From contig NIVC01004439.1 in NCBI GenBank assembly GCA_002269645.1, positions 1-45,856 of the forward strand: DNA of 45,856 bases, given 5' to 3'. This document shows, piece after piece, positions 4,802 to 32,873 of the stretch. Source of the stretch: Macrostomum lignano. Its lineage: Eukaryota. Position 1 is the stretch's first letter, and each line of letters begins with the position of its first letter. A program made the position numbers and the translations under genes. Under the pieces are notes generated by a model. That model searched no databases. It saw only the letters and a list, made by a program, of their open reading frames with translations, and was not told where the DNA came from.

Positions 4802-4811
4802 CAATATAAAA

Positions 4812-8800: not shown

Positions 8801-9844
8801 AAAAACGGTTGAAAATATTAGAGATAGAACCCAATTCCATTTAGAAAAGGATATTGATAAAGCAAAGAAATATTTCTCAAAACCTAACTTTAAAGACTTT
8901 ATAAAATTTGATGATAACTTTATGGGTATTCATATGAGAAATAAAACAACAAAATTTCTTAAACCAATATTTATTGGAATGGTTGTTTTAGATTTGCAAA
9001 GCTAGTAATGTATGAATACTATTATGATGTTATAAATAAAACATGGCCAGATAACTATCCAATATATGCAGACACCGACAGTTTGGTATTTAAGGTTGAA
9101 ACAGATGATCGGACAGCCGCGAACCAAAGGTTCGATGTCTATAAAGATATGGAAAAAATTAAGGATACATTGGATACCTCCGACTATCCGGATAACCATC
9201 CTTTAAAATCAGATCAAAATAAAAAAGTTGTACTTAAAATGAAAGATGAATTAAATAGCAAAATCATAACCGAGTTTATAGCAATAAGATCAAAATGCTA
9301 TGCATTTAAGGTTTTAGGACAGGAGGGAGAGGTAAAAAAAATAAAAGGGGTATCAAGAGCAGCAGTAAAAAAGATAACATTTGATGATTATAAAAACGTA
9401 CTTTTAGATTACCTTAATACAATTGAAAATTATCATGCTCCACAATATCGATTAAATTCAGATAAGCATCAGATGTTTGTCATCGAGACAGATAAAAAAA
9501 CATTAAGTCCATTTGATGATAAAAGATATTTAGATGATAAAATTAAAACATATCCATATGGTTTAAAAGAAGAGATAAAAAATATGATAAAAGATAAAAA
9601 ACAAAAAGAAGATATAATAAGTAAATATAATGAATACAAAGCGGCAATAAATAATTATTATTACGATTGTGATTGTGAATCCGAATGTGATTGTGAATAT
9701 AATACATTTCTAGAATATGAAAAAGATATAGATAATTATTATTCAACATTTCCAAAAGAACTTAAAAAATTAAATAAGGAAAAAGTCTTGAATAACTGGA
9801 AGAGATTAACAGAAAAATTACTTATCGGGTCTGTAAAAAACTAA
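5881..9844 (+). CDS. polB: Protein-primed family B DNA polymerase (~1320 aa; frameshifts near 7790 and 9000)
   Basis: ExoI IYADFE, ExoII FFHNGSGYD, YLDANNLYG, KLMNNAFYGK, YADTDS, SKCY and KGV motifs; EndoVII-like Zn insert CFMC...HCHLTGNYRGAACRSCN typical of Polinton PolB. Confidence 0.97.
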
Positions 9845-10177
9845 AGCATGTAATTGTTTGAGCAAATCATTAACTTCAATTTCATATATTATTGAGCACC
9901 AATTATCCTCACAGTCGGCAGGGTAACTTAAACAATCCTTTATTTTTTTCCTAAGTTTTTTTATTTTTCTAACCAATCTATCTATTTCAATTTCAATTAC
10001 TATTTCAGCATAAACAATATCTTGTCTTAAAAAACGTTTTCTTTTATCTATCTCATATCGGATGGGAAACATATCGTCCCCATACTCATGATATTTCTGA
10101 GATATAATTATATTTATTTTTTTATTAATATCATTAAGTTCACGCTCTTTAGTGATAAGGATTTTTATCGTATCCAT
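9818..10177 (-). CDS. 119-aa hypothetical helical protein
   Basis: ATG-initiated ORF, intact and identical in both copies. Confidence 0.55.
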   Translation of the reverse strand: MDTIKILITKERELNDINKKINIIISQKYHEYGDDMFPIRYEIDKRKRFLRQDIVYAEIVIEIEIDRLVRKIKKLRKKIKDCLSYPADCEDNWCSIIYEIEVNDLLKQLHALVFYRPDK

Positions 10178-10192
10178 TTTCTTATAAAAAAT

Positions 10193-10525
10193 TTAGTCTT
10201 CGTCGTCATCCTCCCAAACAGCCGCCAATTTTACAGTCCTATCACTCTTTTTATTATTTGTTTGTTTTAGTTTAAATTGCAATCCACCCTCGTTGCAGTA
10301 TTTCATAACAAACGCTTTAGGTTTATTAATAACTAAAACAGGAAAATTTTTAACATCATCTCCGCTTAGACATAAAATTTTTTGCCCATCTAATTGTAAA
10401 AATATTGATTGAAGCCCAATAAATTTAACCTGTCTCAAACATATAATATTATATTCTTTATTCTCCAACATATTGGGTGTGAGATAATTAATCACATTAG
10501 AATCGGTTTTGAACCAGCTCTCCAT
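10193..10525 (-). CDS. 110-aa hypothetical protein with acidic tail (possible OB-fold ssDNA-binding protein)
   Basis: Intact in both copies; beta-rich pattern and WEDDDED C-terminus. Confidence 0.55.
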   Translation of the reverse strand: MESWFKTDSNVINYLTPNMLENKEYNIICLRQVKFIGLQSIFLQLDGQKILCLSGDDVKNFPVLVINKPKAFVMKYCNEGGLQFKLKQTNNKKSDRTVKLAAVWEDDDED

Positions 10526-10551
10526 TTTTAATCTAAAAAAATAACAAAAAA

Positions 10552-11064
10552 ATGAAAGACATTTATGTTTGTAATAAATGTAATGTGACTATGCACAGAG
10601 GGCAAACAGCAAACGGAGATATATATCATATGTGTTATTCATGTTCTAAAATATATCAATTTGAAAAAACAAAAAAGATTGAAAACTCATATTACTATTT
10701 TAAAAACACAATTTTAAGAAATCTTACAAGAGACATTTCTGATCCAATTTTAATTCCCGGAAATAATGTTTATTTATATAATAACTTTTTCCATTTAAAT
10801 AAAGGAAAGGGATTAAGTTCGAAAGACTCTGAAAGGATTTTAATTTTAGTTGGATATTATTTCAATTTTCTTATTCGAGAGAATACAAAGTTTATAAGGA
10901 TAGGTAACATACCTAACGAAATGTTATTGAAAAAGTCATTGGAATTTTTATGTATTGATAAAAAATTTAAACCTAGGATCAGAAGAGAGTTACCACTTTG
11001 GGAAGAATATATAACATATGCATTAGAAAAACTAAACAACCTGAAGTTCTACCGCACTTCCTGA
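10552..11064 (+). CDS. 170-aa Zn-ribbon protein (possibly VLTF3-like)
   Basis: CNKC...CYSC at the N-terminus; present in both copies. Confidence 0.55.
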   Translation: MKDIYVCNKCNVTMHRGQTANGDIYHMCYSCSKIYQFEKTKKIENSYYYFKNTILRNLTRDISDPILIPGNNVYLYNNFFHLNKGKGLSSKDSERILILVGYYFNFLIRENTKFIRIGNIPNEMLLKKSLEFLCIDKKFKPRIRRELPLWEEYITYALEKLNNLKFYRTS

Positions 11065-11688
11065 CCGCGGGCTTTGTGCCCCAGTAGCAATAGTTTCAGG
11101 TTCGTAAATGCCTAATGTTTCTATCGGTGGAGCTTTGGGTTTATCGAGTCTCAACTCTTTTAATTCCATATCGGTAAAAGTTTCAACATCTAAAATTCTA
11201 TTTCTATCTTTTAAATATTTTTCATATAATTCAACCGCGGTTGATAATTCATGAATCGTTATCTCTCCGTCATCCAATATTTTTTGCACATATAAATATA
11301 ATTGATTTTTATATTGTTTTGCAACATCTCTTAAAGATTTATATTTTTCCTTTCTTTTTTTAAGATATAATTTAATTGCTAAAAGTATTGATAAGTTCCT
11401 GATCAATTCAAAACCTGATATTGAGCCAATTGAAATACCTAAAAATAATTGAGATAAATTAAGAGTTGGAATAGATTGTAAAATACCTAAAACGATTACA
11501 CATAACATTGATAAGCTTCCAAATCCAATATTGAAAAAGTCCATATTTCTTATATGGTTTGAAACTCTTCTTACTTTTTTAGCATATAAATCATAATCAT
11601 AGTTAATACGATCAACATTACTTAACATCTGACCTTTACGTTGGTTGAACCGGTCGCGTTCCCATTTATCTGCTTCAGATACCGACAT
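11032..11688 (-). CDS. 218-aa two-TM membrane protein of a type common in Polintons
   Basis: Two hydrophobic helices followed by a basic segment and KILDDGEITIHELSTAVELYEKY. Confidence 0.65.
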   Translation of the reverse strand: MSVSEADKWERDRFNQRKGQMLSNVDRINYDYDLYAKKVRRVSNHIRNMDFFNIGFGSLSMLCVIVLGILQSIPTLNLSQLFLGISIGSISGFELIRNLSILLAIKLYLKKRKEKYKSLRDVAKQYKNQLYLYVQKILDDGEITIHELSTAVELYEKYLKDRNRILDVETFTDMELKELRLDKPKAPPIETLGIYEPETIATGAQSPRSGSAVELQVV

Positions 11689-11998
11689 TCTCGTCTATTT
11701 TTAATAGCACCAAAATGAATTCCCCGCTCTTTGGGATTTGTCCCGAGCTCAATAGGTATTGTATTGGAGTTATTCTTTCTTTTTTCTCCCATTTAAATCC
11801 TATTTTCCAAAACTCTTGAAGTATAATATGATTTTTTAATAACTTAATTAATTCTTGAAGCTTCTTATTATCCTGAACATTTACAGTACTAAATAAAAAT
11901 TTGGTATGAGATTTGAATGTTTTTATATTTGATTCTTGTTTAGGAATAGGAATAATAACATTATTTTGCCGCATCGATGGAGTTCTACTAAAAGCCAT
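11675..11998 (-). CDS. 107-aa hypothetical protein (MAFSRTPS...)
   Basis: ATG at 11998; counterpart at 33993-34319. Confidence 0.5.
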   Translation of the reverse strand: MAFSRTPSMRQNNVIIPIPKQESNIKTFKSHTKFLFSTVNVQDNKKLQELIKLLKNHIILQEFWKIGFKWEKKERITPIQYLLSSGQIPKSGEFILVLLKIDENVGI

Positions 11999-12029
11999 TT
12001 TATATAGAAATATTTTATATATAAATATT

Positions 12030-14072
12030 TTATATTTGAGTAGGAGGTTTTTCCAAATAAGCAGTAGAGGGAAAAACATAACCAAACGACGTACTACCAC
12101 ATACAACTGCACCACGAATAAAATGTGCAGCATCCGCTCCACCAGTTCGAGCACCAAAACCCATAAGGGTTCCAGATTTATCTAAAGTTCCCCAAGTTCC
12201 ACTATCATATGTGAAAACGTTCTGTCCAATGAGGGTAAAAGAATCACCAGCAACATTGTATGACTGTAATCGGTACCAAACCCTTTGATTTAAAATATTA
12301 ACTTCAAATAAATGCCAATCGCCGTTATCAATATTAGCATAGGCTACAGTTTGATCCGCATCACTACTAACATCGTTACGAACCGTAGATCCGTCTGATT
12401 TTTTATTACTCCAAACAACTCCAAACCTATCATGCCACTCACTAGCAAAACTATCAATCCGGCGTCGGTTGATAATCCAGTCCAAATTCCGATGTTGGAC
12501 GTTGTGACAGTATGCATAAAACCAAACCGCATCTGCACCATCTCCTGTAGCATTAGCAACTCGGAAAAAGAAAGACGCAGATATATTTTGAAAATGTGTG
12601 AAATTGAATTGTAAAGCACCACTTACTCCAGAAGTTTCACGAGTAATTCTAGCGCCGTTTTGATAATCGATATAAGAAGCGTCACCAATTAAAGAACCGA
12701 CTGGATATATATCTCCGGCGGTTGTTGGATTTTGATATCCAGACCAATTGCAAATTACTGGTTCGAACAAGGCCGCATCAATAGCAGGTATTCCATCCAA
12801 TTTATTTTTATCGCTTCCAGACATTCTACCATTTGATGTTGGAGTAGCTAGCTGATCTACGTACGCTCGCGGAACTGCAGAAAGTATTTGAGTTGGCCAA
12901 TTAAGATCTTGAATTTCAACACGGTGTTCAAATAATTGTATTTGACGAACCTCGATAGGTTGTGTACCGGTACCACCAGTTGGGAAGAATACGCTATAAT
13001 ATTTCCAAAAATTAGTCGTTAAATTAGATAGAGCAAATGATGTTGCTTGAACTGGTGATCCCGACGTAGTTAATGTCGTCCATGAATCGGTAGCAACATT
13101 TTTTGCGCGAACCGACCACCCCGAGGGTATCTCAATTGTTTCACTGCCTGTAATTCTTAATTCAAATATTCTTCTATTATAACCTAAAAATTCAAATTGA
13201 ATTTCCATATTGGTTGTGGTTCCGGTATTTGGTGACCATTGTGTCGCAAGGCTTCCATCTCCAACTCGAAAAGCTGTGTTGCCATTTTCAGATGCTGTAA
13301 GAACAACATCAGGATTTGAAGTATTTGATGTAAGCGGCGTGGTAAAAATATCGGCGTCGGTTGCATTAGCTCGCTCGTTTACTTGGCCTAGAGTTATCGA
13401 GTCTGCGTTCTCTGTTCCAAATAATAAATTTGTTAATTTAAAATTATTCATATTAATATTACCACTACGAGTGGCAACTTGATTATCGACATAGTTCTTA
13501 TCAACCACTGAATCACTAGTTGTAATTGAAACATTTATAATTCGGTTGTTGCTCATATCTAGGTTTCCGGTTGCGGTGGTTTGAACATAACGTGAATCAG
13601 AATCAGTTCGAGAATAAGAATCAGTTACATCTCTTTTTAAATTTAATCCATTATCAACTTCGGTTTTGGTATAAGAATCGGCTACGTTCCGTTTCAAATT
13701 TAATGAATTATCAACTTCGGTTTTGGTATAAGAATCGGCTGTATTGCGTTTTAAATTTAATGAATTATCAACTTCGTTTTGGTATAAGAATCGGCTGTAT
13801 TGCGTTTTAAATTTAATGAATTATCAACTTCGGTTTTGGTATAGGAATCGGCTACGTTCCGTTTCAGATTTAGTGAATCATCTATTTGAGTTTTGGTATA
13901 GGAATCTGCAACATTTCTTTTTAAATTTAGTTTAGTATCAATTCACTTTTTTTATAACCTTCATCTCATTAATATATCGATTATCTCCAAATGTAACACT
14001 TATTCCACCAGATGTGCCACCACCACCACTACTTGTTGTTCCGTTCCATGAGGGTGTTCCAGAAAATAACAT
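12030..14072 (-). CDS. Fibre/receptor-binding-like protein: 14-aa repeats, discoidin (F5/8C)-like domain and ConA/L-lectin-like domain; N-terminus frameshifted
   Basis: KRNVADSYTKTEVDN repeats; ASENGNTAFRVGDGSLATQWSP...IQFEF; C-terminal SGALQFN...GDGADAVWFYAY. Confidence 0.7.
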
Positions 14073-14082
14073 TTTTTACTGT

Positions 14083-14529
14083 CTATTTTATAGAGTCTAA
14101 AATATCTGCTTTGCATGATACTAAATCTTCGGGTTTCCTTCGAGTTATTAATTTTATATAAAAAATACAACGCCGCTTGCCCGCAATAACTTTTATCAAA
14201 GTTTGAAATTGTTCGTGATGATCTCCACATAAACGATTTTTAGTATGATTAAATTTATCTTTTATTTCCTGTAACGGAGGAAGCGCGTATGAATCAAAAA
14301 AATAAACAAGTTTTGGTTTTGAATAAACTGCTGACCAATGAACACCATTTTCTTTTGTTGTTTCAATATTAACAATGAAAGATCCATATTGTGGTAAGTC
14401 TTTGATCTCATCTCGCATAACACATCTGAATGGTTTTATTTTTAACTGCCTCGCCCAATTTGTTAATTCGATATTGCTTGTTGTGTCCGTTCCATATCTT
14501 TGTTTAAAATCATCCCACGTCATGGTCAT
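14083..14529 (-). CDS. Adenain-type cysteine maturation protease (1-nt frameshift before the catalytic Cys)
   Basis: NGVHW (His), FFDSY (Asp); the adjacent frame continues with (Q)NFDKSYCGQAALYF (Gln/Cys). Confidence 0.9.
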   Translation of the reverse strand: MTMTWDDFKQRYGTDTTSNIELTNWARQLKIKPFRCVMRDEIKDLPQYGSFIVNIETTKENGVHWSAVYSKPKLVYFFDSYALPPLQEIKDKFNHTKNRLCGDHHEQFQTLIKVIAGKRRCIFYIKLITRRKPEDLVSCKADILDSIK

Positions 14530-14530
14530 T

Positions 14531-14730
14531 TTATGTTCCTGAAAAACTCTTGGTTTTAGTTAGTTTCGTAGGTGTGGGTTTTAACAATTCCTTTCTTATT
14601 TTATCAGCTTGTAACTGCCTTAATTTTGCTAGTTCTAGTTCGTAATTATCTTCAGCTTTTTTAACTTTTTCTGATTGTTTTTTTATTAAATTATTATTAT
14701 TATTTTACGCCATGTTGTTCGATTACCCAT
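14531..14730 (-). CDS. Small coiled-coil protein (~65 aa)
   Basis: NLIKKQSEKVKKAEDNYELELAKLRQLQADKIRKELL present in both copies between penton and protease. Confidence 0.45.
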
Positions 14731-14733
14731 TTA

Positions 14734-15513
14734 CTAAACCTGTTTTATACGTAAAATTATTGTTATTGACTGCCCACCAAAACTTATTAATCTATCGCTT
14801 TCATCTACAATCCTAATATAAATTGATTGAACATTATATTGATTTAATGGGTAATATATTGGGGTTTGAGGTGATACAATCATTTTCTCTCCAATTGGAA
14901 CAGCAAGAAATGGGATTGAATAAATAATTCCACGTTGAACCAAAACTCCGTTATCTGTTATATAACCACCGTTTGAAATGTCGGTTGTTATATTAATTGT
15001 ATTACTCCACCCTCATATTTCCACTGTATCACCGGTGCTTGATGTGGTAACTATTCGGGAATTAAATCCAAGTATGGTTCTGAGTGAATTTGCAATTGTG
15101 AAATCAACCTGATATCCGGATCCTAGTGATAGTGTGAATCTGCCAGACGGTAAATCAACACCTATAACAATTGCTCCTGCTACCCAATCACCATTAGTTG
15201 TTAATTCTCCTTCTATATAAGCATTCAAATCAGTATAGCTATACGCTCCTGGGTTAACGCTAAATGTTGTCCAATTGGCTCCGGAATCTTTAGAATATCT
15301 AAATTGATTATTTGTTGCATTAATTAATTGAGGCATGTTGAAAACCGAAAATAGTATTAAACCTATTTGATAACTTAGGCTTTGATCAAGTTGTAATGGA
15401 TCGCGCAATTGAATCCGTTGCTCGCTGGTTGTCATTATAAACTGTAATGTTGTACTAAATTTTGAATTAGTTCGATCTACCAATTGTTTTATAGTATTTA
15501 AATTTGTAGTCAT
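14734..15513 (-). CDS. Minor capsid protein (penton, single jelly roll); frameshifted
   Basis: LRDPLQLD...YQIGL...NNQFRY...PGAYSYTDL and C-terminal IIYSIP...PIYYPL...IRIVDESDRLISFGGQSITIILRIK pattern. Confidence 0.85.
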
Positions 15514-15528
15514 TTTTATAGTGGGAAA

Positions 15529-16314
15529 TTAATTCTCTTCCTCTCCTTCTTTTATCAAATTTGTTAAAATTCTATGTTTCCTTTCTAACCTCGGATTGAT
15601 ATAAATATGTTTGTATTGGCTATCATCCCAAATTTTTTTACACATACTTTTAAATGGTTTTGCATCCAATCCGGGATTAAATCTAGCGTGAATATTTTGT
15701 AATCATAATTATCTAAATCAAACATTACACAACAACTTGCATTCTTTTTTATAATCGATTCTAATTCTCTAAAGGATTGAGTAAGATAAAAAGCTCCAAT
15801 TCCATCTCCTCTACCACTAACAAAAATTTCCTTTTGCAATTCTTGATCACCGTCATTAATACAATCATCAAAAATAATTAGTGTTTTATCATGTTTTGGA
15901 ATTTGATCATAGGCTAATCGGGTTGATACTCTAACAGTTGGGGCGATCGGACGAAGTCCGCGACCCTTCGGGGCGATCGGTGATGTTTTCTGGCTGTTGT
16001 GCCATTGTTTTACATAAATCCTCAATGTCTGCTAGATTAAATCGCGGTTCGTCATCATCCTCATATTGCTCATATGCTCTTAACATTCTAAACAAGACAT
16101 CTTTTTTTAATTTGTTTTTTAATCCATGTTTAAGAAATTCATAATATTTTATTCTAGGTTTATTAGTATAAATTATTAAATTATTATAGTCTAACATTCC
16201 ATCTGTTGTTAATAAATCGTAAACAAAGTGTGTTTTTCCTTTACCTGATCCTCCGATTACTAAACAAAGAAAAGGATCATTTGGAAATATTTTATTGTGT
16301 TTTGCCTTTACCAT
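15529..16314 (-). CDS. A32/FtsK-like genome packaging ATPase; frameshifted
   Basis: Walker A GGSGKGKT, Walker B LIIFDD, SGRG and YLTQS motifs. Confidence 0.92.
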
Positions 16315-16329
16315 TTTTAAAGAAATAAT

Positions 16330-17829
16330 TTAAATAGGCGCGACGGTCGGAGACCTGCATTTTACAGCGGCGTCCCGAACAATCGTGCCATCAGCTTTAG
16401 CAATTGACATATATTCCTCTAGAAACAATACGTGGGCGTCAAGTGCCTGATTACCGGTTTTATTAATCTCTAACATATAATTAAGTCCAATATTGGCTAC
16501 GTTTTCTTTCTGTGCCGTTAGATCATAAACAACCACTGGATGAATGTTTAGAAACTCTGTGGGTGTGTACTGAGGGACGGCATACGCTTCATTTTTGCAT
16601 AATCTTGATAATATTTTATAAAATCATTAACATTATTATTTGCTATATTTAAATTTAGGGGTCTTTAACCGGATAATATTGATCATCAACCTGCAGGCGG
16701 ATATTCTGAACATTAAACTCGTTAATAGCTGCAGCCGCATTGTCTGTTGCGGTGGCTGCTTGTTCTGCTATGGCACCGGATTGAAGCCAATATAAATCCC
16801 CATTTGCTCTTTTACTCCTTCTATTTGTTATCTTAAACCAAACAAAAATATATCTCACCCGACGTTTTGATGTCAGTATTTGCCACTGGAATGAATCCTG
16901 GTTATTATTAATGGTTCGCATAAAATGTCGACGATTCAAATAAAATATTTCCTGATCATGCGTTAACTGATTATCGATGTGTTTTAAAAGTGGGGCTGTT
17001 ACCTCAATAGTTGGTACGACTAATTGAATTGAATCTATACGAACTGCTATATCGGTTGAAATTGAGGTTCCATAAAGTATCCTAGGCTGATATCCACCAG
17101 ATATTTGCAACTGTATCCCAAATTTTAATCCTTTCCATACCCGATTTGGTGAGAAAAACCCAAATAGTGGAAAGATTGAAAAGTCCTGCTCATATGCTGT
17201 TGCTGTGGTTAAAACCGCGACTGGGAATTTATTCTGACGATCTATAAAACCAGTATTAATATCTTTTGTATTAGTCATAGTGGTTACAACTGGAACTATG
17301 TTTGTATTAAGGTAAACAATTAGCGCTGCAGTATCTGCACCGGCTGCGTTTTGTACATTAGGGAAAACTACTGCTTGCCGTTACCTTTATCCGGCATCCA
17401 CCCAACATTATCACCAACTTGTTTTGATAAATAAGTATAATTTAAATGTTTCAAAACTCCATTAATCTCTGCGGGGTTTGATGATGTCTCAACCTCAGCA
17501 CCATTAACAGTTAGTTGAGCTTGGGAAAAACATTTATAAAACCAATCATTTTCTATTATTATTCCGGATCGATCTGCGATATCTCCGGCTGCAAGAGCAG
17601 TTCCATCATTTCTAGTATACAACCATCTAACGCGGAAAAACGCATTTTTCATATCCAATATAGTGTTGGTTGCGCCGATGTCAAAAGTTACCGTTCCAGT
17701 AGTAAAGTTATTTGAATTATCACTTGTTGGTAGGGTATAATTTAAATCTCTTGCTCTGACCTCATTAATATACTGTCGGTGCTTTTTGAAATGAAATTTA
17801 TCACTCCACATAGTTTTTGTTTCAGCCAT
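16330..17829 (-). CDS. Major capsid protein (double jelly roll, hexon-like); frameshifted
   Basis: FDIG...LDMKNAFFRVR, FSQAQLTVNGAEVE, PLFGFF, RYIFVWF, NIRLQVDDQYYP and VVVYDLTAQKE; ~500 aa once frames are joined. Confidence 0.88.
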
Positions 17830-17863
17830 TTTTTTAAGTTAAAAAAGTTTTTTATGTTAAAAA

Positions 17864-18528
17864 ATGAGTCAATTTATGGACGTTGATGGAGAGTTAGCGA
17901 TTTATAAAGAGAAGCAAAGATATTCTGATTTTGTTAGAAATTTACAAAAAAGAAAGTTAGGAATACAATTAGCGGGTGAAAGATTTGCTGCTCCTTTTGT
18001 TAATCCTATTACTGGGAAAATTAGTGAACTAGAAAAAACAGATAAAGATCTTCTGGAAAAAATTGCTAAAAATACGAGCCAAAAGAGGATGAAATTTTGG
18101 ATGAGCCGCCTGCTTATGATGTTGATCAAGCACAATTGAGAATTGCAGAGATTAGACGTGCAGAGCGGGGCGATCGGGAACAATATCCAAGAGTACCAGC
18201 TAGTATTGCTGCGACAGATTTAGGTAATAATAATTATCGAATTGGTGGAGTTGATAAAAATCGAGATGAACTATATAGAGAATTGGGTGGAGCATATAAT
18301 ATTGTTATGAACCCTAGGGTAAAATTTAACCCTGATTTATATACTAGGGATGAATTAATAAGTGCTAGAATTTTTTATGATGAGTTAGGAGGAGCTGTTA
18401 AAAATACCAGCTTGTATAAAAGGATTGTTAATTCTATAAATAACAAACCAGCTGTTGGAGAAGGATTTAAAACACCGCGAAAACTTGTTTTAGCTGCTGC
18501 GAAAGCTGCTGGACATACTGGAGTTTAA
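17864..18528 (+). CDS. ~220-aa conserved Polinton protein, function unknown; frameshifted
   Basis: Two overlapping ORFs that join into the copy-2 ORF at 40225; C-terminal VGEGF protease-like site. Confidence 0.6.
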
Positions 18529-18555
18529 TTAATTGTTAAATTTATTTTTTATAAA

Positions 18556-19122
18556 ATGGAAACTAATAAGATTTGTACTAAGTGTAAACAAGAAAAACCG
18601 ATGACGAAAGAATTTTATTTTTGGAGAAATGATTCAAAAAAATTTAGAAATGATTGTCGATCTTGTCATAATACCTCATCTGCTATTTGGATAAAAAACA
18701 ATAAAGATAAATGGAATGAATATAGAAAAAATAAGTATCACACTGATGATAATTACAAACATATTGTTTTAATTAGAAATAGAATAAATTGGGCGTTGAA
18801 AAATTTTAATGACAAGGACTATATCTCATATCTTGGTTGCACAAAAGAATTCTTTTTTGATTGGTTAAATTTCACAAGAAATTATTATGTATCAAAAGAT
18901 TATACTGGAAAGTTAGATATTGATCATTTCATCCCGCTTCTTCATTTAGTTACAAAGACGATGATCAGATTAAAAAGTCTGAAAATTGGAGAAATAAAAG
19001 ATACTTAACTAGCGTAGATAATAACTATAAAAAAGTTAAACAACCAACATTGAAGAGTTTGCAAAACAATTGGTGCTTCATGTATTTTTAAGGCTATTAA
19101 AAATGAACCAAATAGTGTTTGA
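18556..19122 (+). CDS. HNH endonuclease with N-terminal Zn finger (giant-virus type); frameshifted
   Basis: CTKC...CRSC; YLGCTKEFF; LDIDHFIP...HWTNKRYLTSVDNNYK when the frames of both copies are combined. Confidence 0.8.
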
Positions 19123-19228
19123 AGGAGGATTTTTAGATGTTCAAAAAGGATTAACAAGCTTACCACCAATCTTTACTACTGGTAAATATACAGGGGAACT
19201 ACACCTACCATCAATGAACTTCACAGGT
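19103..19228 (+). CDS. PLA2 exon 1 (42 aa)
   Basis: MNQIVFEGGFLDVQKGL...GELHLPSMNFTG, ending at the U of the intron 5' splice site. Confidence 0.85.
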
Positions 19229-19530
19229 TAACCCGTGGCCTGAGTGAGGAAGGCAATGTCCTTGCTAGTCACTATTTGTGGCGACATCTCCAAATTGCGT
19301 GAAACCCGTCATACAGCTTCAAGTACCACTTCAATTGAGAAATCTTTTGAAGGAACAGAGGTAACTCCTCTTCCCAAAGGTAAAAAGCTTGAAGACACGG
19401 TGGCAATGCGCAGCCAAGCTCCTAAGTATTTTAAATATAAGGAGAAGGTTCAGAGAGCAGACGGAGATGGGCGGTAATTATCGCCGCTTAAGGTGTGCTC
19501 CAGCCTCTTCGAAAGATTGAGGGTAAACTA
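19229..19530 (+). ncRNA. Group I self-splicing intron, IC1-like (302 nt)
   Basis: P AAATTGCGTGAAA, Q AATGCGCAGCCAAG, R GTTCAGAGAGCAG and S TAAGGTGTGCTCC; P3 CATCTCC/GGAGATG; P7 G-A(bulge)-GAGCA/TGCTCC; P5abc; P1 with a U-G pair. Removing it restores NFTG|PGT. Confidence 0.93.
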
Positions 19531-19853
19531 CCGGCACTCGCTTAGATTTGAGATTAAATCCTGACAATACTCCAAAATCTGATTCAATTCCAATAAATGG
19601 GATTGATTGGTTAGCATACTATCACGACTTAGCATATAGAGATGCTGACAAGAACCCGCCCGAGGAAGCATTAAGATTAAAACATGAAGCCGATCAAAAA
19701 ATGATTCAAGGATTAGATAACTTGCAGGGATTATCGGTAGGTCAAAAATTAACTAGGTGGATGGTTAAAAAATTCTTGCAGTCTAAAGTTAAATTTGGTT
19801 TAGGAATTAATTACAACAACATGGAAATAATTGTGTCGAATGTTTGTTATTAA
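19531..19853 (+). CDS. PLA2 exon 2 (parvovirus VP1u-type phospholipase A2)
   Basis: PGTRLDLRL...PINGIDWLAYYHDLAY...EADQKM: HD catalytic dyad and downstream D. Confidence 0.88.
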
Positions 19854-20666
19854 GTGGTAGTGGGCTAAGTTCTGATAAGGCTAAGGTTCTTCATAAAGAA
19901 TATCGAAAACCTAAATTTTATAGAAAAATCATGAACTTCAAAAAGAATGAAATTTGGTATGCTGATTTAATGTCGATGCCGAACGAAAGAGGATATAAAT
20001 ATATCTTAACCATATTAGATGGTTTTACTCGATACGCGTGGGCTGTTCCTTTAAATCCAAAAAGGAGAGGATGTTGCTGCTGCTTTTAGAAGTCTTGGAG
20101 AAAAAAGCGAACGTTTGTGTGTTGACGAAGGAAAAGAATTTTACAATCCTCATATGTATAAATTGTATCATTTTGAAAAAGGACAAGAAAGGAAAAAGGA
20201 CGCGAATGGGGAGTATATTAATAAAATTTATTCTATTTATGGAGAGAGTAAAAACGCATTAATAGAAAGATTTAATCGAACTTTAGGTAAGAAATTATGG
20301 TTTCAGTTTAGTCTTAATGGTAACCAAAAGTGGGTAAAAATATTACCAGACGTAGTGAAAGATTATAACAATTCATATCATTCAGCTATAAAGATGACTC
20401 CTCAACAAGCTTATAACAATCCTGAAAAGTTAAAGTTACTTTTGGAAAATTTGAAAAAAAAAAAAAATTTTAAGGTTGGTGATTCTGTTTATATCTATAA
20501 ATGGAAAGATAAGTTTGAAAAGGAAGAAAAGGATATTGGAAATAAGTGAGAAATTTACCATCAGTAAAGTTTTAAATACCAATCCTACAACCTATATAAT
20601 TGCTGATAAGGACGGTGAAGAAATATTGGGTTCTTTTATGAGAACCAGATAATGTCTGCGAACTAA
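19844..20666 (+). CDS. Retroviral-type (rve, DDE) integrase; frameshifted; probably C-terminal to PLA2
   Basis: VLHKEYRK...IWYADL...YKYILTILDGFTRYAWAVPL, VDEGKEF, NALIERFNRTL, YNNSYHSAIKMTP. Confidence 0.93.
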
Positions 20667-20676
20667 GTTCAAACAG

Positions 20677-20901
20677 TTACTTAAGACAACATGGTAGTAA
20701 ATTTTTTATAACAAACAAAAACAATATTATTACTATAATTGTTACTAATATTATTATTGACATTTGTTCAACTGTTATCAAACTTAAATTTTCATTAAGT
20801 TCATTAATTGGAACATTTCCGATGTAGGAATAGTTTACCTTCATTTTTTTATATATATTTTTCACAATAAATGTCGTTTCTGTTATAGAATAATAGTTCA
20901 T
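20677..20901 (-). CDS. 74-aa single-TM protein
   Basis: Hydrophobic IIILVTIIVIILFLFVI; identical in both copies. Confidence 0.55.
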   Translation of the reverse strand: MNYYSITETTFIVKNIYKKMKVNYSYIGNVPINELNENLSLITVEQMSIIILVTIIVIILFLFVIKNLLPCCLK

Positions 20902-20917
20902 TTTTTAAATATTTTTT

Positions 20918-21232
20918 TCACATAAAAATTTCACTTTCATTCTCTGAATCACTGGTTTCATATGAACTATTTGTTGATTCGGAATCTGTTGATCTAACCT
21001 CCCAATCATCCGAATTTAAATAATCTCCAAGTTGAAATATTAACTCACCCTCTTGTTCTAAATCATACATCTCATCTAGCTCTAATGGATAAAGTTTTAG
21101 GTCGTGCTTGTCGTCATATTTTAAATAAACTTCATCAATTATTCCATTCAAAATATGTTGTTTTATTATCTCTGCATTTTTAGCAACAGTCTCAAAAGTA
21201 TCACTAACAGAAAAGGTGTAAACTCGGGTCAT
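20918..21232 (-). CDS. 104-aa acidic hypothetical protein
   Basis: ATG next to the right TIR; identical in both copies. Confidence 0.55.
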   Translation of the reverse strand: MTRVYTFSVSDTFETVAKNAEIIKQHILNGIIDEVYLKYDDKHDLKLYPLELDEMYDLEQEGELIFQLGDYLNSDDWEVRSTDSESTNSSYETSDSENESEIFM

Positions 21233-21249
21233 TTTTAGTAACAGAAAAA

Positions 21250-21556
21250 GACCCTTCGCGCCTGCGGCGCGGGCAAGGGGTTATAGAGTAGTAGTATAGA
21301 AAAAGACGCTTCTAGATCAGACCTTATTTTAATGGCCGTTTGTAAGGTCTTAAGAGGGGGGACGCGAGGGGGGTGTTGGGGAGTGTTTGGAAGTTTGGGA
21401 AATGATTTTTATTGTTAGGGGTGATTATGGGTGATTAGATGTGTTAAGGGTGTTTAGATGTGTTTTTTTATTTACCCCCCGTGTCCCCCCTCTAGACCCT
21501 TAAAACGGTAATTAAAAAAGTGCTCTGGGTCTAGAAGCGTCTTTTTCTATACTACT
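21250..21556 (-). repeat. Right TIR of copy 1 (307 bp)
   Basis: Reverse complement of 3914-4221; internal terminal 27-mer at 21290-21316. Confidence 0.95.
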
Positions 21557-21785
21557 TACATCCAAGTACTTGGAAAGTATCCAAAGTAGAGCCTACTTGG
21601 TTCGACTTTCCAAGTTTGCAAAGTACACTTCCGATGTCTACATCCAAATACTTAGAAAGTATCCAAAGTAGAGCCTACTTGGTTCGACTTTCCAAGTTTG
21701 CAAAGTACACTTCCGATGTCTACATCCAAGTACTTGGAAAGTATCCAAAGTAGAGCCTACTTGGTTGACTTTCCAAGTTTGCAAA
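21557..21785. repeat. 82-bp tandem repeat, ~2.8 copies
   Basis: Units start with TACATCCA at 21557, 21639 and 21721. Confidence 0.9.
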
Positions 21786-25730: not shown

Positions 25731-26167
25731 CTAACCATTCTGCACCATCAGCTGGATGCTTTTCAGAGCGGCATAGGTGCCACCAGTGGCGTATTTCCAC
25801 ATCATCTTCTTGAGCGAATCAGCGATGACGGAGGTCTCGTAGACGCCGCTCGGGTTGCAGTAGGCGCAGCTCGAGTACCACCAGCCGCCGTTGCCGCAGT
25901 GAGCCACAGAGCAGCTGGAACCGGACCTGCCATCGTTGTCCCGGTCCATAGTGGAGAACTGGCTGCCTTTGTGGTAGGCCAGAGCGTCTCCCGTCATGTT
26001 GGAGCTGGCGGTCAGGTACGAGGTGTAAGTCATGGCGTAGTTGGTGCTGGCGTCGCCTACGGTGAAGCCGGAGTACTCGGCGATGAAGAGTTCGTCAGCC
26101 CAGGTGACAGCCTCCACCCGCAGCACTCTCGGCGTGCTGCCCGTCAGCTCGTTGATGATGCGAAGAC
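25731..26167 (-). CDS. Host fibrinogen-related domain (FReD) terminal exon
   Basis: After a TTTGTTTCAG acceptor: (G)LRIINELTG...LRVE...AEYSGFTVGD...DALAYHKGSQFSTMDRDND...C...GGWWYSSC..CNPSG. Confidence 0.9.
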
Positions 26168-26244: not shown

Positions 26245-26542
26245 AGTAGTATAGAAAAAGACGCTTCTAGACCCAGAGCACTTTTTTAATGCCCGTTTTA
26301 AGGGTCTAGAGGGGGGACACGGGGGGTAAATAAAAAAACACATCTAAACACCATTAATACATCTAATCACCCATAATCACCCCTAACAATAAAAATCACT
26401 TCCAAACACTCCCCAACACCCCCCTCGCGTCCCCCCTCTTAAGACCTTACAAACGGCCATTAAAATAAGGTCTGATCTAGAAGCGTCTTTTTCTATACTA
26501 CTACTCTATAACCCCTTGCCCGCGCCGCAGGCGCGAAGGGTC
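26245..26542 (+). repeat. Left TIR of copy 2 (298 bp)
   Basis: Lacks one 10-bp internal unit relative to copy 1; internal inverted terminus at 26476-26502. Confidence 0.95.
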
Positions 26543-26723
26543 GGAAAGAATAGAAGCTATTTATAGTCAGCTCACCTACCCACCCAACATTCCATTTAGA
26601 CCAGATTTTAGACCAAACAAAACTAGACTATCGTTTTGGTTTTCGTTTTCAAAAATTTGGTCTAAAATCTGGTCTAAATGGAATGCAGACAATCTTTTTC
26701 TGTTACTAAAAATAGAACAAAAA

Positions 26724-27122
26724 ATGACACACGTTACACATATGCAAAATCTGAATGAATTGCAGGTAGGAGACCCAGTTGAATACCGAGGTGAGGGGCT
26801 TTTTGATGTGGTTGGAACAGCAGCAAATTTTGTTAAAGACAATATGGGGCTTATAGGGCAAGCTGGCTCTGCAGCAGGCTCTATAACAAATGCTGTAAAA
26901 GGAGGAATTGAAGCAGCTAGAGCGGCAGAAGAACTAAAGAAATTGAGAGATTTTAACGACACCCTCTCACAAATAAATGCAATAAAAGATTTAAAGCTGG
27001 CACAAGCCGCACAACCAACAGAAACCCCCACGAAAAGCGCGCCAATAAGTAATAAAGATATTCAGGATTTTAATAAAATGTTAAATACTATTAAAGGTGG
27101 AAAAGGATTAAAGAAATTTTAA
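26724..27122 (+). CDS. 132-aa putative virion core/minor protein (copy 2)
   Basis: Identical to 4403-4801. Confidence 0.65.
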   Translation: MTHVTHMQNLNELQVGDPVEYRGEGLFDVVGTAANFVKDNMGLIGQAGSAAGSITNAVKGGIEAARAAEELKKLRDFNDTLSQINAIKDLKLAQAAQPTETPTKSAPISNKDIQDFNKMLNTIKGGKGLKKF

Positions 27123-27132
27123 CAATATAAAA

Positions 27133-28119
27133 ATGGACACAGATAACGACCGCTTATATTTTATAGGAGAAATTGTAGATACTTTAGATCTGGATGATAA
27201 TAAACATAGCCACACAATGTTAAAAAGATTGGATCGATTAGGTAAAAAGTTTGACTACGACATCGATACATTTAAACTCGCAGCAAAATATGCACAAGAA
27301 GGAAGGCCAATATCCTTTAAGAATCGCGGCAGAAATTATAGGTTGACAGACTCCGATGTGAAATTTTTAATGGAGACTCACACTAAAAAGGACGGCGGAT
27401 TACTACCCATTCTACCGCTTCTTTTAGGACTTGGCGCAGCTGGAGCAGTCGGTTTAGCCGGAAAAAGAATTCATGATAATGTAAAACAGCTAGGAGAGTT
27501 AAGAGCGAAACAGGGGGGAATCTTGCCCCTTGCAGCTTTGCTCCCAATAATTTTTGCAGGAATTGGAGCAGCTGGAGGAGTTGCTGGCGGAGCAGCTGGA
27601 ATTGCAAAAGCAGTAAATGACAAAAAAGCTGCGGACGAAAAAGCTAAAAGAGAGGCCGAATTTCAAAGACAGCAAATAACGCAGGACGCACAATTTAAAC
27701 AGAAACTTATTGATACCATTAATAGTAGTTCAGCAACAGCAGAGCAAAAAAGAAATGCAGAAGCTAGGTTAGCAGCCGGAAAAGGTTTACTCTTGCAAGG
27801 AACAAATCACGGGAATGGTTTGGTACTAAAAGGAACAACCCAAGGAAGTGGAGTTGTCGCAGATAAACTACATGAATTTGGCCAAACTTTAGAAAAAACG
27901 GGTGAGAAAGCTAAAGGATTTTTTGACAATATTGGATCCAATTTTAGACCAGCTGTTCAGAAAATTTTTAATAAATTAGGAAAAGATTTTAACATCATTG
28001 AAAAACACGACGGAAGCGGATTATATCTCGAAATGAGACCAAAAGCAGGTTCAGGAATTTTCTTAAATTCAAACGTTATGGGCAATGGATTGCTATTACC
28101 AAAAGCAGATCTCGAATAG
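27133..28119 (+). CDS. pX-like core/membrane protein, intact, 328 aa
   Basis: Two pX-like hydrophobic segments and six G[KNS]G[LIV] motifs. Confidence 0.72.
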   Translation: MDTDNDRLYFIGEIVDTLDLDDNKHSHTMLKRLDRLGKKFDYDIDTFKLAAKYAQEGRPISFKNRGRNYRLTDSDVKFLMETHTKKDGGLLPILPLLLGLGAAGAVGLAGKRIHDNVKQLGELRAKQGGILPLAALLPIIFAGIGAAGGVAGGAAGIAKAVNDKKAADEKAKREAEFQRQQITQDAQFKQKLIDTINSSSATAEQKRNAEARLAAGKGLLLQGTNHGNGLVLKGTTQGSGVVADKLHEFGQTLEKTGEKAKGFFDNIGSNFRPAVQKIFNKLGKDFNIIEKHDGSGLYLEMRPKAGSGIFLNSNVMGNGLLLPKADLE

Positions 28120-28203
28120 GCTCCTGGGGGGAGGGTCTGGACACCAAAAACACAAAATTAAAAAATCAATAATTCAAACATTATATAAATTTTATTCTAT
28201 AAA

Positions 28204-31200
28204 ATGGAAGCAATTTTAGCTCAAATCGACAACCCTGAACTTAGAGCGCAATTAATAGCTCAAATCGATGCACAACGAATTGCCGATAGGGCTGAAATAG
28301 AAGCAAGAATTAGGGCAGAAAATGAGATACGTTTAGAAAGACAATTAAATGATATTAATAACCCCCAACCACAAGGACAAAATGGAGCTGAAGTAATATA
28401 TATAGATATAGATATAAATACAAATTATAAAGAATATTTTAAACAAATGAAAGATAAATTAAAGACCATATTAAACAATTATACTATAAGGCCAAATAAC
28501 AAACGACAGCCAATTAAGTATAAAATAGAAGTTGAAACAGAATTTAAAAAACCAAATATTCTTAATGCAAATTCAGAAATTGAAGTAATAAATAACTTTT
28601 CACAAGAATCATATAAAACATTATTATCAATGGGAAATTACAACAATCAATTCGATCAAATAGAAGCTGAGTTTGATGAATGGATAGATAAGATGACAGA
28701 AAACGGATCTGGGTTTATATTTGTTTCATGCAATTCAGCAACAGTAAAGATTGCACCCATAGAAATTCTTAAAGGACGATCACATATGAAGCTCAAATTT
28801 AAATCACCTATGATTATAAATCCAGACAATAAAGATAATAAATGTTTATTATGGTGTTTATTAATTCATAAATATCACAATCAAGTAGAATCACACATTA
28901 ATAAAATATATAATTATAGACAATATGAGGATGAAATAATAATGAAAAACATATCATACCCAGTAGCAATAGATGATATATATAAGATTGAAAAAATGAA
29001 TGGTTTAAATATTAATGTTTTACAATTGAAGAACCAAAAGATCTAGAAGAAATTCAAGGTCGATCCAGAATGGTATAAGAAAAGGTGTTATCTTGTTAAG
29101 CCAGCAACTGATATAACAGCACCAGATCAAATCGATCTTTTGTACATGCAGCGCGAAAATGAAACACATTATATATACATAAAAGATATTAGTTCTTTTT
29201 TAAGAGAAAATAGAAATAGATATCCACTATGTAGAAATTGTTTTACATTTAAAAAGGATGAAACAGCTCTTAAAAACCACCAACGATTTTGTTTAGATCA
29301 CAAATTTACTAATGCTATAATGCCAGCATCTGAAGATGCAACCCTAAAGTTCCAACAACATTATATGGCAGTTAAAAAACCAATAGTAATATATGCTGAT
29401 TTTGAAGCAACAAATGTTCCCTTAAAAGAATCACAGACGGTATCTGATGACGGTGAATGCACAAAAAAATTGGCACAACAGTTTCCGAATAGTTATTGTA
29501 TATATGTACACTCTGTAGCTGATCATATATTTAAATCAAGGATGATTACTTACCACGGTAATGATGCAGCTAAGCACATGGCAGAATCATTAGTAAATGT
29601 ATTTGAATATATTCAAAATCAATATGATAAATTATCAAAAAATATTAATATGACAAATAAGGATAGAGACAATTATAAAAATGCAACAAATTGTTTTATG
29701 TGCAAAAGACATTTAAGTAAGAATAATAAGATACGAGAACATTGTCATCTAACAGGAAATTATCGAGGGGCAGCATGTAGATCATGTAATGCAAAAGAAG
29801 GAAAAGGATGTAAGGAAATACCAGTATTTTTTCATAATGGTTCCGGATATGATTTTCATTTCTTAGTTCGAGAATTGCTTCATTTAGGAAAGGATGAATA
29901 TGAAATAAATATATTACCTAAAACATCAGAAAATTACATATCAATAACATATGGTAAGAAATACTCCCATCTAGTTTTTCTAGATTCCTTGAGATTCTTA
30001 TCAACATCTTTAGCAAATGTTGTTTCATCATTAGTTCCAAAACCATGGGATTTAGAAATAGTAAAGAAAAACTTTCCAATCTTATTGAATCGTTTCAAAA
30101 AAGAAAAACTATCCGAGGAAGAACTAATGCTATTAACTCGTAAGGGCATCTATCCATATGAATATGTAACATCTGAAGACGTATTTTTTCATACCGAATT
30201 ACCCCCAATTGAAAAGTTTTATTCAACATTATCACAAACAAACATAAGTGAATCGGATTATGAACACGCTCAAAAAGTATGGAAATACTTTAATTGTAAA
30301 ACATTTAAAGATTATCATAATCTATATCTTAAAGCAGATGTTCTCCTATTAGCTGATGCATTTGAAAACTTTAGGAATCATACATATGAGAATTTTAAAA
30401 TTGATCCCGCATATTGTTTCAGTGCACCGGGATTAACATGGGCTTGTGGTTTGAAACATACAGATGTTAAGATTGATTTACTAACTGATCATGATATGTT
30501 GTTAATGATTGAGAGAGGAATTCGCGGTGGATTCTCGGGTGTACTAGGAGATAGATATACTAAAGTAAATAATAAATATCTACCAAATTATAATAAAAAA
30601 GAAAAATCATCATATGTATTATATCTAGATGCAAACAATTTATACGGTGGTTGTATGAAACAAAAATTACCAATAGCTGATTTCCAATGGGAAGATGACC
30701 CCGATTATTACAAAAATATTCCCGAAGGAAGGGGCTGTATCGTAGAAGTGGATTTGCAATATACTCGGGAAGCAAAAGCAAAAACATATAAATATCCTTT
30801 AGCTCCAGAGCATTGTTCAGTTAATGAAGATGATTTATCACAAACACAAAAAGATTATCTTAAAGTAGATAATGCAAAACATCTAGCAACAAAAAAATTA
30901 ATATTAAATTTACATGATAAGAAAAACTATGTAGTGCATTATAAGCTTCTACAATTTTATGAAAAGCAGGGATTAAAAGTGTCTAAAGTACATCGAACAA
31001 TATCGTTTATTGAGGAAGATTGGTTAGCTAAATATATTGACTTTAATTCAAATCAGAGACAGATGTCAAAAACAAATTTTGAGAAAGATTATTGGAAATT
31101 AATGAATAATGCTTTTTATGGAAAAACGGTTGAAAATATTAGAGATAGAACCCAATTCCATTTAGAAAAGGATATTGATAAAGCAAAGAAATATTTCTCA

Positions 31201-32499: not shown

Positions 32500-32514
32500 T
32501 TTCTTATAAAAAAT

Positions 32515-32847: not shown

Positions 32848-32873
32848 TTTTAATCTAAAAAAATAACAAAAAA

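What the first reader, a model, noticed from the sequence alone, without database searches (positions are those of the whole stretch)
19229..19530. Group I self-splicing intron (IC1-like) inside a Polinton PLA2 gene in an apparently animal nuclear genome
Seen in the sequence: the conserved PLA2 Ca-binding loop is split as ...MNFTG (ends 19228) / PGTRLDL (starts 19531) by a 302-nt insert that folds as a complete group I ribozyme. P1 pairs exon UCACAGGU with IGS GCCUG(AG)UGA, with the U-G pair at G19238. P2 and P2.1 carry the GCUAGUC...GGCGAC motif. P3 is CAUCUCC (19285-91)/GGAGAUG (19463-69). P4 is UGCGU/GCGCA. P5abc has an A-rich bulge plus GAAA and GUAA tetraloops. P6 is CUCCU/AGGAG. P7 is G,A-bulge,GAGCA (19453-59)/UGCUCC (19496-501), with an intact G-C guanosine-binding pair and three compensatory pairs relative to the Tetrahymena intron. 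P8 is GGCGGU/AUCGCC. P9 has a GAAA loop, and P10 pairs with exon 2. Established knowledge: IC1 introns are typical of protist and fungal nuclear rDNA and occur in chlorovirus protein genes, while in animals group I introns are known to me only from mitochondria of non-bilaterians. A ribozyme intron in an mRNA of an integrated animal Polinton appears undescribed or at least very rare, and it points to exchange with protist or fungal viruses (inference).
Basis: partly seen in the sequence, partly recalled or inferred. Interest (0 to 1): 0.97.

Follow-up and report, generated by a model that had tools for sequence, protein, structure and literature searches.

The report
Ribozyme intron in animal Polinton gene
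A genuine group I (self-splicing type) intron splits the phospholipase gene of a virus-like Polinton element present twice in what looks like an animal genome, a setting where such introns are not known, although these two copies are decayed and lack the usual final G, so they probably cannot finish splicing.

Summary
A roughly 300-nt insert splits the PLA2-like gene exactly at the point where uninterrupted relatives read straight through. It matches Rfam RF00028 over the model's full length, above the gathering score. The window holds two copies of a 17.7-kb element, and both carry the insert (A 19229-19530, B 41624-41920). All core helices are intact, including the P7 pseudoknot that the model does not score.

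The element is a Polinton. It has ~310-bp TIRs, a 6-bp TSD (copy B), an HNH-bearing protein-primed polymerase, integrase pieces and a mavirus-like double jelly-roll capsid protein. A flanking fibrinogen-domain ORF, whose closest relative is from a flatworm, indicates an animal host; the species is unresolved.

- The intron's last base at the homology-defined junction is A in both copies, not the terminal G of known group I introns. P9.0 and P10 nevertheless fit only that junction.
- Both copies are decaying, with many broken genes.
- Chlorovirus introns are subgroup IB.
- RF00028 introns were reported in 2025 in Polinton-like viruses of protists.

A free-standing HNH/endonuclease VII ORF sits just upstream of the PLA2 gene. 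I found no report of such an intron in an animal Polinton. Activity, subgroup and origin remain untested.

The parts
19229..19530 (+). Group I intron, copy A (302 nt): bounds set by the P1 U.G pair at the 5' side and by uninterrupted PLA2 relatives at the 3' side
   Evidence: RF00028 57 bits, E 7.7e-14. Helices verified. Junction fixed by alignment A2. P9.0 and P10 fit this boundary.
41624..41920 (+). Group I intron, copy B (297 nt)
   Evidence: RF00028 60.2 bits. 98% identical to copy A. Helices kept. P9.0 fully Watson-Crick and P10 4/5 at this boundary.
19103..19853 (+). PLA2-like gene, copy A (exon 1 19103-19228, intron, exon 2 to the stop at 19853). One frameshift relative to copy B.
   Evidence: Exon 2 gives a weak PF08398 match. 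Exons aligned as separate rows to uninterrupted relatives. Relative P0003 passes PF08398 at 39.7 bits.
41477..42259 (+). PLA2-like gene, copy B (exon 1 41477-41623, intron, exon 2 41921-42259). One frame across the homology junction.
18556..19008 (+). Free-standing endonuclease VII/HNH-type ORF (150 aa) directly upstream of the PLA2 gene, copy A. The copy B counterpart is split by 2 frameshifts.
   Evidence: phrog_1035 endonuclease VII E 1.6e-9 and phrog_2255 HNH E 2.2e-5. Copy comparison.
3909..21561 (+). Polinton copy A (outer bounds of the TIR match; TIRs about 3909-4221 and 21250-21561). No clear TSD.
   Evidence: Self-comparison; ends
26245..43951 (+). Polinton copy B (AG...CT termini; TIRs about 26245-26542 and 43646-43951). 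6-bp TSD TACCAA at 26239-26244 and 43952-43957.
5881..9005 (+). Protein-primed DNA polymerase B with an embedded endonuclease VII/HNH domain, copy A (1 frameshift). Copy B counterpart 28204-31329 (1 in-frame stop).
   Evidence: PF02945 E 8e-7. More than 3,000 relatives of 1,000-1,270 aa, several with PF03175, one named from Exaiptasia diaphana. Break counts.
39015..40190 (-). Major capsid protein (double jelly roll), copy B. Copy A counterpart 16655-17829 (1 frameshift). Both are shorter than their 450-500-aa relatives.
   Evidence: Relatives. Model pLDDT 78.6, pTM 0.79. Best fold match is the mavirus MCP, E 5.6e-6.
19844..20652 (+). rve-type integrase, copy A, in pieces (at least 2 breaks). 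Copy B counterpart 42232-42845 (at least 1 break).
   Evidence: PF00665 E 2.9e-7 and PF13683 weak. ORF maps.
25731..26126 (-). Host flank: fibrinogen C-terminal domain ORF, outside the TIRs, about 120 nt from copy B
   Evidence: PF00147 E 5.1e-20. Best relative is Macrostomum lignano, 57% identity, E 4e-31.

Best explanation
The insert is a true group I intron. It has an IC1-like periphery (P2, P2.1 and a P5abc-type extension) and a minimal P9.

It sits in the most conserved motif of the virion PLA2-like gene of a Polinton, the Ca-loop region between Gly and Pro. Two recently diverged copies of that Polinton are integrated in an animal genome.

Inferred mechanism in the active ancestor:
1. The gene is transcribed with the intron.
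2. The RNA folds and P1 presents the U.G pair.
3. A free guanosine bound at the P7 G-C site attacks after U19228.
4. P9.0 and P10 bring the 3' junction into the same site, and the exons are joined to give the uninterrupted PLA2 reading seen in relatives.

Shown here: the fold, the insertion point, the carrier and the flank. Inferred: the chemistry.

As they stand, both copies end the intron in A rather than G, and many of their genes are broken. I therefore take them for relics in which the second step is probably impaired. My estimate is about 0.2 that these copies still yield a correct mRNA.

The neighbouring free-standing HNH-type nuclease ORF may have spread the intron by collaborative homing. 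This is inference only.
For: - RF00028 matches above the gathering score over the full model in both copies.
- All helices are intact in both copies. Differences between the copies keep the pairing or lie in loops.
- P7 is not part of the covariance model's structure, yet it pairs perfectly with two double changes relative to the consensus.
- The insertion point is exact against 14 uninterrupted relatives. It lies within PF08398.
- Only the homology junction has a full Watson-Crick P9.0 together with the best P10. The joint chance is 0.0037.
- Polinton hallmarks are present.
- The flank is animal-type.
- There is an HNH ORF next door.
- The closest PLA2 relative, P0001, has a gene call that begins exactly at the exon-2 boundary. 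This hints that it is interrupted at the same site.
Against: - The terminal base is A in both copies, where group I chemistry uses a terminal G (mechanism as in PMC2588497).
- The nearest G's, 7-9 nt upstream, have no P9.0 and at most 2 P10 pairs. They would give extra residues, a frameshift or a stop.
- The two copies are about 98% identical, so they carry no covariation or selection signal.
- There is no expression data.
- The host species is unresolved.
- The subgroup was not tested with subgroup models.
- No packaging ATPase or protease was recognised.
Confidence: 0.8

Rival explanations
1. The intron is still active and joins the exons precisely at the homology junction despite the non-G terminal base, perhaps inefficiently or with help from a host factor.
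For: P9.0 and P10 fit that junction and the core is undamaged. The intron-bearing element inserted at least twice at different sites.
Against: The P7 guanosine-binding pair is the standard G-C, so nothing suggests a changed specificity. The element's other genes are decaying.
Confidence: 0.12
2. The ribozyme uses one of the G's 7-9 nt upstream. In copy B one of these keeps the frame and adds three residues inside the Ca loop.
For: The RF00028 alignment ends on the first G of that run. One option is in frame in copy B.
Against: There is no P9.0 and at most 2 P10 pairs at these sites. Two of the three options lead into stops (an immediate stop, or a shifted frame that soon ends). None of 14 relatives has extra residues there. 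Two of the G's pair within the P9 stem.
Confidence: 0.05
3. The setting is not an animal nuclear genome. The contig comes from a protist or symbiont, or is chimeric.
For: The species is unresolved and there is only one informative flank ORF. Look-ups found no record.
Against: Fibrinogen_C matches at E 5e-20, with its best relative in a flatworm. Copy B has a clean 6-bp TSD in that flank. Polymerase relatives lie on megabase contigs and one is from a sea anemone.
Confidence: 0.07
4. The insert is not a ribozyme intron. It is a chance resemblance, or a stretch removed by the spliceosome.
For: The default whole-window scan found nothing. MFE z-scores are modest, at -1.5 and -2.6.
Against: E-values are 1e-13 to 1e-14 in both copies over the full model. 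The P7 pseudoknot is independent support. The insert has no GT...AG bounds.
Confidence: 0.02

Closest known systems
RF00028 group I introns in Polinton-like viruses of protists (Paulinella micropora, Desmodesmus armatus, Rhodomonas lacustris; PMC12220804)
   Same: Same RNA family, a carrier of the same broad virus group, located in a protein-coding gene, about 300-380 nt, no recognised nuclease inside the intron.
   Different: Those hosts are protists, and that paper calls the introns restricted to a few protist groups. In Rhodomonas the interrupted gene is a short ORF upstream of the capsid gene. Here the carrier is a polymerase- and integrase-bearing Polinton in an animal-type flank, and the gene is the PLA2.
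Chlorovirus self-splicing introns in protein genes (PBCV-1 a125l TFIIS-like gene; PMC7019647)
   Same: A group I intron in an mRNA of a eukaryotic DNA virus.
   Different: Subgroup IB, a giant virus of algae, not integrated in an animal genome.
Nuclear rDNA group I introns of the IC1 type (Tetrahymena-type; established knowledge)
   Same: P2 and P2.1 together with a P5abc-type extension carrying an A-rich bulge. GNRA loops on the P5 extension and on P9.
   Different: Those lie in rRNA genes of protists and fungi and end in G. This one lies in a protein gene, has a single P9 hairpin and ends in A. Subgroup membership was not tested.
[quoted passage not shown] 2009, as cited in PMC11296320)
   Same: An intron without its own nuclease gene, next to a free-standing HNH-type nuclease ORF.
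   Different: That system was shown in phages. Here there is only adjacency, the nuclease's target is unknown, and its copy B counterpart is broken.
Mitochondrial group I introns of hexacorals and sponges (PMC5496520)
   Same: Group I introns in animals.
   Different: Those are organellar. This one lies in nuclear-type DNA inside a virus-like element.

Membership tests
Group I intron (Rfam RF00028) | Covariance-model score at or above the curated gathering score, over the full model | tested here: met
   57 and 60.2 bits against 50, model 1-253/253
Group I intron (Rfam RF00028) | P1 with a U.G wobble at the 5' splice site | tested here: met
   U19228.G19238 inside a 7-bp P1, the same in copy B
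Group I intron (Rfam RF00028) | P3-P7 pseudoknot with a G-C pair next to a bulged A (guanosine-binding site), plus P4-P6 and P8 | tested here: met
   All helices pair in both copies. P7 has two double changes relative to the consensus.
Group I intron (Rfam RF00028) | Terminal guanosine at the 3' splice site | tested here: not met
   The last base at the junction fixed by homology, P9.0 and P10 is A in both copies. The upstream G's lack guide helices.
Group I intron (Rfam RF00028) | P9.0 and P10 helices that guide the 3' splice site | tested here: met
   Found only at the homology junction. Joint chance 0.0037. P10 is weaker in copy A.
Group I intron (Rfam RF00028) | Self-splicing of the transcript | not testable with these tools
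   No expression or biochemical data were available.
Subgroup IC1 | P2 and P2.1, plus a P5abc extension with an A-rich bulge | tested here: met
   MFE folds and helix checks
Subgroup IC1 | Match to a subgroup-specific model or phylogeny. Extended P9 (P9.1, P9.2) in typical members. | not testable with these tools
   No subgroup models were on hand. P9 here is a single hairpin.
Polinton / Maverick | Terminal inverted repeats of several hundred bp and a 6-bp target-site duplication | tested here: met
   ~310-bp TIRs in both copies. TSD TACCAA for copy B. No TSD seen for copy A.
Polinton / Maverick | Protein-primed family B DNA polymerase | tested here: met
   Pfam does not match the ORF directly. 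Its relatives of about 1,000-1,270 aa (37-58% identical) carry PF03175 and PF02945. This is the layout of the HNH-bearing pPolB2 class of PMC10748475.
Polinton / Maverick | Retrovirus-type (rve) integrase | tested here: met
   PF00665 E 2.9e-7 at 31.1 bits, just under the cut-off of 32.6 because the gene is in pieces.
Polinton / Maverick | Double jelly-roll major capsid protein | tested here: met
   The AlphaFold model (pLDDT 78.6) best matches the mavirus MCP, E 5.6e-6.
Polinton / Maverick | Packaging ATPase and adenain-type protease | tested here: inconclusive
   No Pfam or PHROG match at E up to 5. Several ORFs remain unassigned.
Parvovirus-type PLA2-like domain (PF08398) | Profile match, with the Ca-loop and His-Asp motif columns kept | tested here: inconclusive
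   Exon 2 alone scores 18.5 bits, below the cut-off of 23.9, and covers profile positions 21-73. Exon 1 alone gives no match. The uninterrupted relative P0003 scores 39.7 bits over 2-79/80. The motif columns are kept in alignment A2. The joined product was not searched, by rule.
Collaborative homing pair (free-standing nuclease plus intron) | The nuclease gene adjoins the intron-bearing gene, and the nuclease cuts the intron-less allele | tested here: inconclusive
   Adjacency is met. The cleavage target cannot be tested with these tools.

The most novel reading that the evidence does not exclude
A lineage of animal Polintons (adintovirus-like viruses) carries a splicing-competent, mobile group I intron in its virion PLA2 gene, spread by the neighbouring free-standing HNH-type nuclease. 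This would be the first ribozyme intron known to act on nuclear-type transcripts in Metazoa. The two copies here would be decayed descendants of that lineage.
Probability: 0.3. Interest if true: 0.9.

Novelty: new member of a known kind. Interest (0 to 1): 0.72.

Why it matters
In animals, group I introns are known only from the mitochondria of a few non-bilaterian groups (PMC5496520). In the nucleus of other eukaryotes they are essentially confined to rDNA. Those in Polinton-like viruses have been reported only from protists (PMC12220804).

A member inside a Polinton integrated in an animal genome extends the known range of ribozyme introns to animal nuclear DNA. It also shows that virus-like elements can carry such introns between distant hosts. 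It provides a concrete locus where expression data could show whether a ribozyme intron is removed from an animal mRNA.

There is also a practical point. Default Rfam filters on long contigs missed both copies, so similar introns may be under-counted in surveys.

Tried and rejected
- The whole-window Rfam scan at gathering thresholds found nothing. This was a filter effect, and the region scan finds the intron.
- Pfam, PHROGs and PDB sequence searches did not name the polymerase, capsid protein, ATPase or protease directly. The polymerase was settled through its relatives and the capsid protein by fold.
- I tried to identify the host by exact look-up of the flank ORF, in two start variants with small flanks. 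No record was found. The other flank ORFs have no domains.
- I tested whether the intron is more conserved than its surroundings. It is not significantly so (P = 0.19), and the divergence is mosaic.
- I tested whether the upstream nuclease ORF is a paralogue of the polymerase's HNH domain. There is no significant similarity.
- I rejected removal by the spliceosome, because the insert has no GT...AG bounds that keep the frame.
- I rejected the G run upstream as the 3' splice site, because it has no guide helices.
- My first script used wrong P6 coordinates, and one scan used J7/9 coordinates off by one. Both were corrected.

Full report
**What is there.** The stretch 19229-19530 interrupts an ORF that ends ...MNFTG at 19228. 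A whole-window Rfam scan with default filters gave nothing. A scan of 19100-19700 gave RF00028 (group I catalytic intron) at 19219-19521: 57 bits against a gathering score of 50, E 7.7e-14, covering the model from position 1 to 253.

**Two copies.** A self-comparison shows that the window holds two copies of an element of about 17.7 kb in the same orientation. Copy A spans 3909-21561 and copy B spans 26245-43951. The two long aligned blocks are 97.5% and 95.9% identical, gaps counted, and each copy has terminal inverted repeats of about 310 bp. Copy B carries the same RNA match at 41614-41911 with 60.2 bits. A sensitive scan of the whole window found no other intron, and there are no tRNAs.

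**The fold.**
- MFE folding alone recovers P1, P2, P2.1, P3, P4-P6 with a long three-way P5 extension, P8 and P9.
- A script check confirmed each helix in both copies: P1 of 7 bp with the U19228.G19238 wobble, P3 19285-91/19463-69, P4, P5, P5a/b/c with an A-rich bulge, P6, P8, and P9 with a GAAA loop.
- P7 (19455-59/19496-500, plus G19453-C19501 across a bulged A) forms a pseudoknot that the Rfam structure does not include. It nevertheless pairs perfectly and differs from the family consensus by two double changes. This is support independent of the model score.
- The few differences between the copies keep the pairing (G.U to A-U in P2, a mismatch to A-U in P5) or lie in loops and junctions.

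**The gene.**
- I never joined the exons for a search, a fold or an alignment.
- Exon 2 alone gives a weak partial match to PF08398, the parvovirus-type PLA2-like domain: 18.5 bits, profile positions 21-73. Exon 1 alone gives no match.
- A protein search with exon 2 of copy B found 17 relatives, most of them annotated with PF08398.
- In an alignment with the two exons as separate rows, the uninterrupted relatives read straight through the point where exon 1 ends and exon 2 begins. They have no extra residues there, and the columns just after the junction are the most conserved in the family.
- One such relative, P0003, passes PF08398 at 39.7 bits over profile positions 2-79.
The intron sits in the most conserved motif of the gene, as mobile introns often do.

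**The 3' end.**
- For every possible boundary I scored P9.0 (the two bases before the boundary against the two bases after P7) and P10 (the first exon bases against the 5' part of the guide sequence).
- Only the junction required by homology (19530|19531 in A, 41920|41921 in B) has a full Watson-Crick P9.0 together with the best P10 (4 of 5 pairs in copy B). The joint chance at a junction fixed beforehand is 0.0037.
- The last intron base there is A in both copies. In group I splicing, the terminal guanosine occupies the guanosine site for exon ligation (PMC2588497).
- The run of G's 7-9 nt upstream has no P9.0 and at most 2 P10 pairs. Two of those G's pair in the P9 stem. Use of these G's would give three extra residues in the Ca loop (absent from all relatives), a frameshift or an immediate stop.
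- I give this as a description of the intron's bound and propose no change.
- My reading is that the guide helices record where the intron used to be spliced, and that these two copies probably cannot complete the second step.

**The carrier.**
- Copy B has AG...CT termini and a 6-bp duplication, TACCAA.
- The large ORF (A 5881-9005, B 28204-31329) carries an endonuclease VII/HNH domain. It has thousands of relatives of 1,000-1,270 aa, many on megabase contigs. Several carry PF03175, and one is named from Exaiptasia diaphana. This fits the HNH-bearing pPolB2 class described in PMC10748475.
- Integrase pieces match rve.
- The 391-aa ORF of copy B was modelled from 25 sequences (pLDDT 78.6). Its best structural match is the mavirus major capsid protein, followed by other double jelly-roll capsid proteins.
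- PLA2-like genes are a known feature of Polintons and adintoviruses (PMC8502044).

**State of the copies** (counts only, and the ORF maps):

| Gene | Copy A | Copy B |
|---|---|---|
| Polymerase | 1 frameshift | 1 in-frame stop |
| First ORF | 1 frameshift | open |
| 488-aa ORF | at least 2 breaks | open |
| Capsid gene | 1 frameshift | open |
| 178-aa ORF | 1 frameshift | open |
| PLA2 gene | 1 frameshift relative to B | one frame |
| Integrase | at least 2 breaks | at least 1 break |
| 220-aa ORF | open | 2 frameshifts |
| Nuclease ORF | open | 2 frameshifts |
| Hypervariable gene | open | at least 1 break |

Both capsid ORFs are also shorter than their relatives. Both copies are decaying.

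**Host.** Outside the TIRs, about 120 nt from copy B, an ORF matches Fibrinogen_C at E 5.1e-20. Its only close relative in the word-indexed search is from the flatworm Macrostomum lignano, at 57% identity. This makes an animal host likely, but the species is unresolved. I do not take the contig for human.

**Divergence.** The intron differs at 1.0 per 100 nt between the copies, against 1.8 for the element as a whole. The difference is not significant. Divergence is mosaic: most of the element differs by under 1%, there are hypervariable patches, exon 1 differs at 7.9%, and the capsid gene has no substitutions. Two such similar copies cannot show covariation or selection.

**Literature.**
- RF00028 introns were reported in 2025 in Polinton-like viruses of a few protists (PMC12220804).
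- The PBCV-1 intron is subgroup IB (PMC7019647).
- Group I introns in metazoans are reported only from mitogenomes (PMC5496520).
- Searches for such an intron in animal Polintons, Mavericks or adintoviruses found nothing.

I also did not fetch DNA of related elements, by look-up of the closest relative's contig or by pattern scan for the intron.

**Verdict.** This is a real group I intron in a new setting, an animal-integrated Polinton. It is a new member of a known kind. Its activity is doubtful in these copies, and its subgroup and origin are untested.

Noticed in passing
window 18556-19008 (+): A free-standing endonuclease VII/HNH-type ORF ends about 95 nt before the PLA2 start codon and about 220 nt before the intron site. 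The layout recalls collaborative homing in phages. It is not a close paralogue of the polymerase's HNH domain.
   Followed up: partly
window 11900-14000 and 34300-36400 (-): A hypervariable gene, 12-18% diverged with a stretch that does not align, while the rest of the element differs by under 1%. It holds a 57-nt tandem repeat with 5.6 copies in A and 8.3 in B, and gives weak tail-fibre-like PHROG matches. It may be a surface or attachment protein.
   Followed up: partly
window 16655-17829 against 39015-40190; 19103-19228 against 41477-41623: Divergence between the copies is mosaic. The capsid gene has 0 substitutions in 1,175 nt, while PLA2 exon 1 differs at 7.9%. This suggests recombination or gene conversion among family members.
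   Followed up: partly
window 3909-3913 and 21557-21561; 21557-21785: Copy A shows no 6-bp target-site duplication. Its inverted-repeat match runs 5 nt further out than in copy B. An 82-nt tandem repeat (2.8 copies) starts at its right end.
   Followed up: no
window 26239-26244 and 43952-43957: Copy B has a clean 6-bp duplication (TACCAA). It lies about 120 nt from a fibrinogen-domain ORF, so the element may have inserted into or beside a host gene.
   Followed up: partly
protein P0001: The gene call of the closest PLA2 relative (64% identity) begins exactly at the exon-2 boundary. This suggests the same interruption in a diverged relative. Its DNA was not fetched.
   Followed up: no
window 1-45856: The default Rfam gathering scan of the whole window missed both introns. 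Even the sensitive whole-window scan kept only copy B. Only short-stretch scans find both. Surveys run on long contigs may under-count such introns.
   Followed up: yes
window 4812-5567 and 27133-28116 (+): The first ORF of the element gives a weak, sub-threshold match to adenovirus protein X (PF05829, E 0.007-0.01). In adintoviruses a pX-like part is fused to the PLA2 gene (PMC8502044); here it would be a separate ORF.
   Followed up: no
window 3914-4181 and 26245-26502; 4261-4369: Short internal inverted repeats (about 82 nt, 83% identical) lie inside the left TIR region. Hairpins there give miRNA-family hits far below the gathering scores.
   Followed up: no
window 23945-24547, 25034-25329, 45000-45385, 45500-45609: The host flanks hold satellite-like arrays with periods of 42, 83 and 29 nt, and a (TTG)n run.
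   Followed up: no
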